From Scyliorhinus canicula (lineage: Eukaryota): a DNA stretch of 64,000 nucleotides. A program made the translations under genes and the position numbers. The notes below the pieces were generated by a model that saw only the letters and a list, made by a program, of their open reading frames with translations, was not told the DNA's origin and ran no database searches. The stretch lies in NCBI RefSeq assembly GCF_902713615.1, contig NW_024055760.1, positions 1,353,712-1,417,711 on the forward strand. Reading direction: 5' to 3'. This document shows positions 49,972-50,265 of this stretch, piece after piece; position 1 is the stretch's first letter; the number at the start of each line of letters is the position of its first letter.

Positions 49972-50226
49972 GGGACAGGTTAGAAATAGAAGGGGGTTCA
50001 GTGCCGTAGATTGGCGAATATACAGACCGGACCTGTACCACATGCTATGGTATCAGCAAAAGCCGGCACAGCCGCCGAGATTGGTCATCATTAACATATT
50101 GACGATGAGAAAGAGAGAGATCTCAGGACGATATCTGGCGGCTGCCAACAAGTCTAAAAGAATGGTTACCTCAATATAAACGCGCTCAGTGTGGAGGACG
50201 GGGCGGTCCTATTACTGTGCAATGAG
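49972..50226 (+). pseudogene. Antigen-receptor V gene segment fragment (best fit TCR alpha/delta type), 5'-truncated and frameshifted
   Basis: LEIEGGSV../C...LYHMLWYQQKPAQPPRLVII...ISGRYLAAANKSK/NGYLNINALSVEDGAV/YYCAM; Trp codon at 50048-50050, TAT TAC TGT at 50210-50218, directly followed by an RSS. Confidence 0.82.
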
Positions 50227-50265
50227 CACAGTGTCACAAAGCAGCTACAACCACGTACGGAAGCC
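50227..50265 (+). other. 23-bp-spacer recombination signal sequence
   Basis: Perfect heptamer CACAGTG (50227-50233), 23-nt spacer, nonamer ACGGAAGCC (6/9 to ACAAAAACC). Confidence 0.75.

What the first reader, a model, noticed from the sequence alone, without database searches (positions are those of the whole stretch)
49972..50265. Orphan TCR-alpha/delta-like V segment with a 23-RSS inside the tRNA palindrome, upstream of an IgM C region
Seen: WYQQKP..PPRLVI...GRY...NKSK(K)NGYLNINALSVEDGAVYYCAM followed directly by CACAGTG-23 nt-ACGGAAGCC. The ORF track misses it because of frameshifts. It has no leader, sits in only the right arm of the palindrome, and lies about 12 kb (plus a gap) from Cmu1, in the opposite orientation. 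Established: sharks mix Ig and TCR components (IgH V segments rearranging to TCR-delta, NAR-TCR). Inference: this may be the reciprocal arrangement, a TCR-type V beside an IgM C that lacks its own V-D-J, or a transposed orphon. Recombination between the flanking arms (48476-49471 and 50755-52265) would flip it to face Cmu. TCR versus light-chain assignment rests on the FR3 and YYCAM motifs only.
Basis: partly seen in the sequence, partly recalled or inferred. Interest (0 to 1): 0.78.

Follow-up and report, generated by a model that had tools for sequence, protein, structure and literature searches.

The report
Headless shark T-cell-receptor V gene relic
This is a leftover T-cell-receptor alpha/delta-type V gene segment that has lost its front end to a tRNA-gene repeat and lies near a shark IgM constant gene, an arrangement described in sharks in 2025; its apparent frameshifts are most likely assembly errors.

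Summary
The V-like sequence and its recombination signal are real. The V body (about 49988-50226, + strand) belongs to a small elasmobranch V family (Scyliorhinus canicula, S. torazame, Carcharodon). It is followed by CACAGTG, a 23-nt spacer and a weak nonamer that is position-for-position homologous to the consensus ACAAAAACC of its relatives. Structure-based searches, a language-model search and a great white shark gene model that joins a family member to TCR-alpha J-C all place the family with TCR alpha/delta V. Lambda light chain is a distant second. The stop codon, the lost first cysteine and the frameshifts are not in short-read contigs from three studies. Those contigs carry 1-nt indels at exactly these sites, and applying them gives an open frame with all V landmarks. 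Similar indels litter the non-coding flank, so the assembly is noisy here. The segment still lacks a leader and about 14 FR1 codons; a high-copy tRNA-associated repeat abuts it at about 49986. The window has no J, no D-type signal and no other V. Cmu is on the opposite strand, 12.2 kb away across a scaffold gap. This is a decapitated V relic, not a V for IgM. TCR-alpha/delta-type V exons between shark IgH clusters were published in 2025 (PMC12227049). The scan has noted similar relics on other pieces of this genome.

The parts
49988..50226 (+). V-domain body, from FR1 'EGGSV' through Cys104 and 'AMS'. Weaker DNA similarity to relatives may extend back to about 49968.
   Evidence: BLASTN to L001 runs from 49988. 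After the read-supported indels the protein aligns without gaps to P0019, P0011 and P0020. phmmer hits are.
50227..50265 (+). 23-RSS: heptamer CACAGTG (50227-33), 23-nt spacer (50234-56), nonamer ACGGAAGCC (50257-65). Reads show A at 50260.
   Evidence: It is homologous to CACAGCG-23-ACAAAAACC of L001 and to the read-through 'HSV...TKTS' of P0019.
50266..50293 (+). Post-RSS flank still alignable to the relative's flank.
50294..50754 (+). Unique non-coding DNA downstream of the V, single-copy depth in reads, carrying at least six 1-nt indel discrepancies against the reads.
49478..49972 (.). Inner palindrome (78% self-complementary) made of tRNA-Pro-like repeat units. Its right end abuts the V, and read depth here is about 6-14 times single copy.
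48173..49471 (.). Left outer arm of the inverted repeat. It carries tRNA-Asn (49250-49325, minus strand) and a reverse-transcriptase fragment.
50755..52740 (.). Right outer arm of the inverted repeat. It carries tRNA-Asn (50902-50977, plus strand).
37458..37769 (-). Cmu1 exon of the neighbouring IgM constant gene (context only). The frame is broken in the assembly.
44539..44638 (.). Scaffold gap (100 N) between the IgM contig and the V/tRNA contig.

Best explanation
This is a germline V gene segment of a small elasmobranch TCR alpha/delta-type V family that has been decapitated. A tRNA-gene-associated repeat, now part of a nested inverted duplication, replaces its leader exon, leader intron and roughly the first 14 FR1 codons. 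The remaining V body and its 23-RSS survive. In the real genome the body is most likely still an open frame, and the stop, the lost Cys23 and the frameshifts in the window are unpolished long-read indel errors. Without a leader or promoter it cannot encode a receptor chain. At most its RSS could still be cut, giving sterile rearrangements. It lies near an IgM constant gene because in elasmobranchs the IgH miniclusters are interspersed with TCR-alpha/delta-type V exons in one antigen-receptor complex. It has no functional tie to that Cmu. Shown: the homology, the RSS, the missing front end, the read-supported frame, and the absence of J or D partners. Inferred: that the repeat caused the truncation, that the segment is silent, and that the window lies in the antigen-receptor complex.
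For: Family membership:
- phmmer of the raw piece finds P0005 (Carcharodon), P0007 and P0011 (S. torazame).
- P0019 (S. canicula) and P0020 join them.
- The corrected V is 58-64% identical and gapless from 'EGGSV' to 'CAM'.

RSS homology: L001 and P0019 carry heptamer-23-ACAAAAACC at the same position.

TCR alpha/delta type:
- Foldseek of a relative's model against Swiss-Prot gives human TRAV or TRAV/DV as the top 11 hits and 22 of the top 30. No IGKV, IGHV or TRBV appears.
- Against the PDB, 48 of the top 50 are TCR chains, although antibodies dominate the PDB.
- The nearest Atlas clusters are TCR V-alpha and alpha/delta V.
- The Carcharodon model P0005 joins a family member to a TRAV, TRAJs and a C-TM region that matches TCR alpha chains at E 2e-12, over a 151-kb gene range.

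Frameshifts are artefacts:
- Contigs of X1, X9 and X11 (three studies) differ from the window by almost no substitutions.
- They carry +T after 50006, -1 at 50013, +G after 50032, +A after 50155 and -1 at 50208, which together restore one open frame with Cys23.
- Six more indels lie in the flank at 100% of depth.
- The arms near the centre differ by 11 gap openings against 6 mismatches.

Decapitation:
- No leader or FR1 start appears anywhere in the window.
- Read depth falls from about 2359 to about 314 at about 49986.
- A depth-169 contig bridges that junction.

Known arrangement: PMC12227049.
Against: - Sequence-only PDB search is ambiguous. FR2 looks like kappa and FR3 like VH, and per-domain scores are 24-32 bits for both. 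NCBI's automatic name for P0019 is 'kappa light chain-like'.
- The structural model is only moderate (pLDDT 68), and it is of a relative, not of this V.
- No balanced shark V phylogeny could be built.
- At 50032, 50155 and 50208 only part of the X1 depth carries the indel. Contigs of paralogues may explain the rest, but a real frameshifted copy is not fully excluded.
- The exact truncation point (49968-49988) is blurred by assembly noise.
- Contigs of run X11 (guessed to be RNA) cover the V and its flank but not the adjacent high-copy repeat, so some transcription is possible.
Confidence: 0.8

Rival explanations
1. One reading: a TCR-type V that serves, or can be flipped to serve, the neighbouring IgM constant gene. 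This would be the reciprocal of Ig-V to TCR-delta trans-rearrangement.
For: The V body frame is open after read correction and the RSS geometry is intact. Inverted arms of 93-97% identity flank it. The Cmu gene has no visible V-D-J in the window. Sharks are known to mix Ig and TCR parts (PMC12227049).
Against: There is no leader and the FR1 start is missing. No J motif, no D and no 12-RSS lies between 37.8 and 50 kb. The V faces away from Cmu across a scaffold gap. No RNA evidence exists, since X22 gave no reads.
Confidence: 0.02
2. The V is a complete, functional TCR alpha/delta V gene in the real genome. The missing front end is a mis-join of the assembly in a repeat-rich, poorly polished region.
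For: The assembly is demonstrably error-prone here. The V body is open and keeps all landmarks. Weak DNA similarity to a relative's leader-intron end was seen upstream.
Against: Short contigs from two studies bridge the repeat/V junction: X1 record 1 (49959-50027, depth 169) and X9 record 18 (49945-50032). Those contigs contain no FR1 start.
Confidence: 0.07
3. It is a relic of an immunoglobulin light-chain (lambda or sigma-type) V, not a TCR V.
For: FR2 reads WYQQKP..PP as in light chains. The best sequence hits outside the family are lambda-like Vs at about 38% identity. IGLV5/6 and VpreB are the runners-up in fold searches. Lambda Vs also carry a 23-RSS. NCBI's automatic name for P0019 is 'kappa light chain-like'.
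Against: The near-universal light-chain 'RFSGS' motif is absent and FR3 is of the TCR-alpha kind. TRAV hits outrank all IGLV hits. A family member lies in one gene model with TRAJ-TRAC. The non-family hits were picked by FR2 similarity, so that comparison is biased.
Confidence: 0.1

Closest known systems
TCR-alpha/delta-type V exons interspersed between IgH miniclusters in the elasmobranch antigen-receptor complex (Flajnik et al. 2025, PMC12227049)
   Same: It is a TCR-alpha/delta-type V with a 23-RSS lying beside an IgM constant gene in a shark genome. Another TCR V was noted 1.16 Mb away on the same piece (scan note, untested).
   Different: This copy is headless and therefore dead. Whether it is one of the exons in that paper's table S1 could not be checked, because the table is not held.
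Catshark and white-shark V family represented by XP 'immunoglobulin kappa light chain-like' of S. canicula (P0019), GCB81484.1 of S. torazame (P0011) and the first V of XP_041031383.1 of Carcharodon (P0005)
   Same: It shares the same landmarks, CDR lengths, FR3 motif (GRYLAAADKS.QNGYLNIS.LSV.DGAVYYCA), V end and 23-RSS. Identity is 58-64%.
   Different: The relatives have a leader, a full FR1 and a consensus nonamer. The window copy lacks the first two and has two or three A-to-G changes in the nonamer.
Ig-TCR trans-rearrangement and TAILV / VH-delta segments of sharks (own knowledge; also cited in PMC12227049)
   Same: Both concern proximity of, and traffic between, Ig and TCR-delta gene segments.
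   Different: Those are VH-type Vs used with TCR delta. This V is not VH-like in FR2, and there is no sign that it is used with Cmu.
Truncated V pseudogenes and orphons of mammalian Ig/TCR loci (own knowledge)
   Same: It is a 5'-truncated V that keeps its RSS, has no leader, and sits away from its J-C.
   Different: Here the truncating sequence is a tRNA-gene repeat inside a nested palindrome.

Membership tests
Rearranging V gene segment, TCR alpha/delta type | V-set domain with Cys23, Trp41 and Cys104 in one open frame | tested here: met
   Not met in the window as assembled (TAG at 50007, Cys23 lost, at least five 1-nt indels). Met once the indels carried by read contigs of three studies are applied. 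The relative P0019:34-127 scores V-set at E 3e-16.
Rearranging V gene segment, TCR alpha/delta type | Heptamer, 23-nt spacer and nonamer directly after the V coding end | tested here: met
   CACAGTG, then 23 nt, then ACGGAAGCC (6 of 9; 7 of 9 with the read-supported A at 50260). It is homologous to the consensus RSS of relatives. No RIC score was computed.
Rearranging V gene segment, TCR alpha/delta type | Leader exon, leader intron and complete FR1 | tested here: not met
   Homology starts at 'EGGSV'. There is an in-frame TAA at 49965-49967 and repeat DNA upstream. No leader or FR1 start appears elsewhere in the window.
Rearranging V gene segment, TCR alpha/delta type | Nearest relatives are TCR alpha/delta Vs rather than Ig Vs | tested here: met
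   Foldseek against Swiss-Prot: top 11 and 22 of the top 30 are TRAV. Against the PDB: 48 of the top 50 are TCR chains. Atlas features agree. Sequence-only PDB search is ambiguous. No balanced shark tree was made.
Rearranging V gene segment, TCR alpha/delta type | Lies upstream of TCR J and C segments, or is found in TCR transcripts | tested here: inconclusive
   No J or TCR C lies in the 64-kb window. A family member in Carcharodon shares a gene model with TRAJ-TRAC. No RNA reads were laid.
V of an IgM minicluster (VH-D-D-J-Cmu) | VH-type V on the same strand as Cmu, with D and J segments close by | tested here: not met
   The V is on the opposite strand, 12.2 kb plus a gap from Cmu1. No J motif or D-type RSS was found, and FR2 is not VH-like.
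Ig light-chain V (kappa, lambda, sigma) | RFSGS-type FR3 start, 12-RSS for kappa, and a linked J-C light-chain cluster | tested here: not met
   FR3 starts GRYLAAA. The RSS spacer is 23 nt, which excludes kappa but not lambda. No light-chain J or C lies in the window. Lambda-like Vs rank second only.
Non-rearranging V-set gene (for example UrIg/UrIg2) | V and J fused in one exon, with no RSS | tested here: not met
   An RSS is present and is conserved across the family.

The most novel reading that the evidence does not exclude
The headless V keeps an open frame and a cuttable 23-RSS because it is still used. One route would be inversional or trans-rearrangement into nearby Ig or TCR-delta D-J elements, with a leader supplied by splicing. 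Alternatively, expansion of tRNA-gene arrays may be a recurrent, locus-specific way in which shark antigen-receptor V genes are killed and copied, as untested scan notes on other pieces of this genome hint.
Probability: 0.04. Interest if true: 0.6.

Novelty: new member of a known kind. Interest (0 to 1): 0.2.

Why it matters
For biology it matters little. It is one more dead TCR-alpha/delta-type V among shark IgH clusters, which fits the published picture of a shared Ig/TCR antigen-receptor complex.

Its practical value is as a warning. In this window single-base indels in the assembly imitate pseudogene lesions, so 'frameshifted' Ig/TCR segments here need read-level checking before they are called dead. 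The Cmu1 exon is one such case.

The family it belongs to has a light-chain-like FR2 and a TCR-alpha-like fold and FR3. That is a small example of the 'intermediate' V domains mentioned in the 2025 paper.

Tried and rejected
- Pfam on the three stop-free pieces of the V found nothing; the pieces are too short.
- The word-indexed protein search with the 88-aa piece found no candidate.
- A profile of the family found only two more fragments at E 0.001 or better. I should have allowed a looser E-value. As a result no named TRAV, IGLV or VH set was obtained and no balanced tree was built.
- Sequence search of the PDB is swamped by multi-V antibody constructs and kappa FR2. I rejected it as a way to assign the class.
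Only the 1.6-kb contig L001 was obtained.
- tblastn and motif scans for a leader, FR1 start, J, or other V in the window found only chance-level hits. These include a weak 'LDMF' match at the palindrome centre and a 'DRTTKSSFTIT' stretch at 49926-49958, both inside repeat DNA.
- Raw RNA reads of X22 gave zero reads, which is no test.
- The scan's own index found no look-alike by sequence.
- Rfam found only the tRNA-Asn pair near the V and nothing in the inner palindrome.
- The idea that the whole palindrome is a fold-back artefact was considered and rejected. One 272-nt arm segment differs by 12 substitutions and no gaps, which looks like real divergence.

Full report
**What is in the sequence**

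On the + strand, 49968-50226 reads as a V domain spread over three frames.
- '..LEIEGGSVP' ends at a TAG stop at 50007.
- 'DLYHMLWYQQKPAQPPRLVI...GRYLAAANKSK' occupies 50030-50158.
- 'KNGYLNINALSVEDGAV' occupies 50158-50208.
- 'YYCAMS' ends at 50226.

Directly behind it lie CACAGTG (50227-50233), a 23-nt spacer and ACGGAAGCC (50257-50265). That is a perfect heptamer, exact spacing and a nonamer matching 6 of 9 positions. RSS-like strings of this quality are not rare in the window (28 loose matches against 6.5 expected in shuffles). The signal therefore counts only because of its position and its homology to relatives.

**Is it a real V, and of which family**

Pfam and the word-indexed search saw nothing in the broken pieces. 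An exhaustive phmmer of the 88-aa piece against 1.84 billion proteins did find true relatives:
- P0005, Carcharodon carcharias XP_041031383.1;
- P0007 and P0011, Scyliorhinus torazame.

Searching from P0011 added P0019 (S. canicula, automatically named 'kappa light chain-like') and P0020/L001, a 1.6-kb contig. These proteins share CDR lengths and the FR3 motif GRYLAAADKS.QNGYLNIS.LSV.DGAVYYCA.

The gene models P0019 and P0020 read through their own RSS as '...CAMRHSV....TKTS', which is CACAGTG, 23 nt and ACAAAAACC. L001 shows CACAGCG-23-ACAAAAACC in DNA. The window aligns to L001 at 74% over 313 nt, from FR1 through the RSS and 28 nt beyond. Its nonamer is therefore the family nonamer with A-to-G changes.

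**The frameshifts are not in the reads**

I laid contigs of three runs from three studies, plus one raw RNA run, on 49850-50860. The contigs match the window with almost no substitutions. They carry the following differences:
- +T after 50006
- -1 at 50013
- +G after 50032
- +A after 50155
- -1 at 50208

At 50006 and 50013 all depth carries the change. At 50155 and 50208, runs X9 and/or X11 carry it at full depth and X1 in part.

Applying these five changes gives one open frame from 49968 to the heptamer. Cys23 is restored (GAT TGC), and Trp41 and YYC are present. This corrected V aligns without gaps to the family at 58-64% identity from 'EGGSV' to 'CAM'.

The same contigs show six more 1-nt indels in the non-coding flank (50275, 50383, 50398, 50417, 50494, 50555) and only one substitution. 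That substitution is G50260A, which improves the nonamer to 7 of 9. The two outer arms near the centre differ by 11 gap openings against 6 mismatches in 464 nt.

An excess of indels over substitutions, shared by independent read sets, is the signature of unpolished long-read assembly. It does not look like allelic variation or pseudogene decay. I conclude that the stop, the Cys23 loss and the frameshifts are very probably assembly errors.

Two caveats apply. The contigs are short, and some depth at three of the sites may come from paralogues.

**The front end really is missing**

The first seven residues of the open frame (NRDRLEI) do not match the family. An in-frame TAA sits at 49965-49967. 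The DNA upstream belongs to the inner palindrome at 49478-49972.

Read depth in X1 falls from about 2359 (49952-49985) to about 314 (49986-50019), and to about 160 in the flank. So a high-copy element abuts single- or low-copy V DNA. A depth-169 contig (49959-50027) and an X9 contig (49945-50032) bridge the junction.

No leader, FR1 start, J motif or second V exists anywhere in the 64 kb. MAFFT suggested a faint similarity of 49945-49975 to the leader-intron end of L001, followed by a 34-nt gap. I treat that as unproven. Either way the splice acceptor and the first FR1 codons are absent.

**TCR or light chain**

Sequence searches against the PDB are ambiguous. FR2 looks like kappa and FR3 like VH. 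Lambda-like Vs are the best non-family sequence hits, but that set was selected on FR2 similarity.

Four balanced or independent lines favour TCR alpha/delta:
- An AlphaFold model of P0019:34-127 (pLDDT 68) searched against Swiss-Prot, which holds all human germline V classes as single entries. TRAV or TRAV/DV take the first 11 places and 22 of the top 30. IGLV5/6/11 and VpreB make up the rest, and no IGKV, IGHV or TRBV appears.
- Against the PDB, 48 of the top 50 hits are TCR chains although antibodies dominate the PDB.
- The Atlas feature search lists TCR V-alpha and alpha/delta V clusters first.
- The Carcharodon model P0005 strings a family member, a typical TRAV, TRAJ-like segments and a C-TM region that matches TCR alpha chains end to end (E 2.4e-12), over a 151-kb gene range.

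The V end also has the 'TG' at positions 8-9 after the Cys codon start. PMC10322711 describes this as a conserved V-alpha feature in cartilaginous fish. I put TCR alpha/delta at about 0.85 and a lambda or sigma-type origin at about 0.1.

**Surroundings**

The V and 490 nt of its downstream DNA are unique in the window. They lie in the spacer of an inverted repeat with arms at 48173-49471 and 50755-52740. Each arm carries a tRNA-Asn gene and a reverse-transcriptase fragment. So the V is not 'in the right arm'.

The IgM constant exons are on the minus strand. Cmu2 is at 36920-37270 (C1-set, E 1e-18) and Cmu1 at 37458-37769. The V is 12.2 kb from Cmu1 on the other strand, across a 100-N gap at 44539-44638. 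Between them lie low-complexity arrays and tRNA genes, but no J, no D-type signal and no 12-spacer RSS.

**Mechanism and comparison with what is known**

The simplest account is that a TCR-alpha/delta-type V once stood here. Growth and inverted duplication of a tRNA-gene repeat then removed its 5' end, leaving a body and an RSS that can no longer yield a protein.

Scan notes on this genome describe similar sites: an orphan TCR V end near another IgM cluster (followed up as an ordinary fossil), an intact TCR V 1.16 Mb away on this piece, and further 'tRNA unit plus headless V' sites on other pieces. I did not test these.

**Verdict**

The TCR-type assignment is supported. The functional 'V for IgM' reading is not supported. 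The element is a headless V relic of a known kind. The one useful new point is that its apparent frameshifts are assembly artefacts. Interest is low.

Noticed in passing
window 49940-50560: At least 11 single-base indel discrepancies, against only 1-2 substitutions, separate the window from read contigs of three studies. The assembly is poorly polished here, so pseudogene calls based on frameshifts in this window are unsafe.
   Followed up: partly
window 37458-37769 (minus strand): The Cmu1 exon changes frame in the assembly ('..ITTGVKK' in one frame, '[23 protein letters not shown]' in another), and Pfam C1-set matches only profile positions 6-54. It may be a real pseudogene lesion or the same kind of assembly indel in an A/C homopolymer run.
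   Followed up: partly
window 49995-50777, run X11: Contigs of a run guessed to be RNA cover the V, the RSS and the unique flank but not the adjacent high-copy repeat, which a DNA library should contain. This may be germline (sterile) transcription of the segment. The library type is unconfirmed.
   Followed up: no
window 50014 and 50208 (loose ends): Contigs diverge into 'GTGCAGTTAGATT' and 'TATTACTGTGCAGTGAGGCACAGCGTTAGA'. These show that unrearranged paralogues of the same V family, with their RSS, are present in the same species' read sets.
   Followed up: no
window 39000-44500: About 5 kb of strongly G-skewed low-complexity arrays (GC skew 0.35-0.42), giving long H/T/S/L-rich pseudo-ORFs on the minus strand, lies upstream of Cmu1 and runs up to the scaffold gap.
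   Followed up: no
window 47867-48709 (minus strand) and 52021-52287 (plus strand): A reverse-transcriptase (RVT_1) fragment of a retroelement is split and duplicated in both outer palindrome arms. The inverted duplication is therefore younger than that insertion.
   Followed up: partly
window 49250-49325 and 50902-50977: A mirror-image pair of tRNA-Asn(GTT) genes lies in the two arms. The right copy scores lower in Rfam (57 against 66 bits) and is 2 nt shorter, possibly again because of assembly indels.
   Followed up: no
P0019 (S. canicula) and P0005 (Carcharodon) gene models: Automatic annotation fuses neighbouring germline V exons by reading through their RSS ('HSV...TKTS'). It names the catshark model 'kappa light chain-like', which looks like a misannotation of TCR-alpha/delta-type V segments.
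   Followed up: partly
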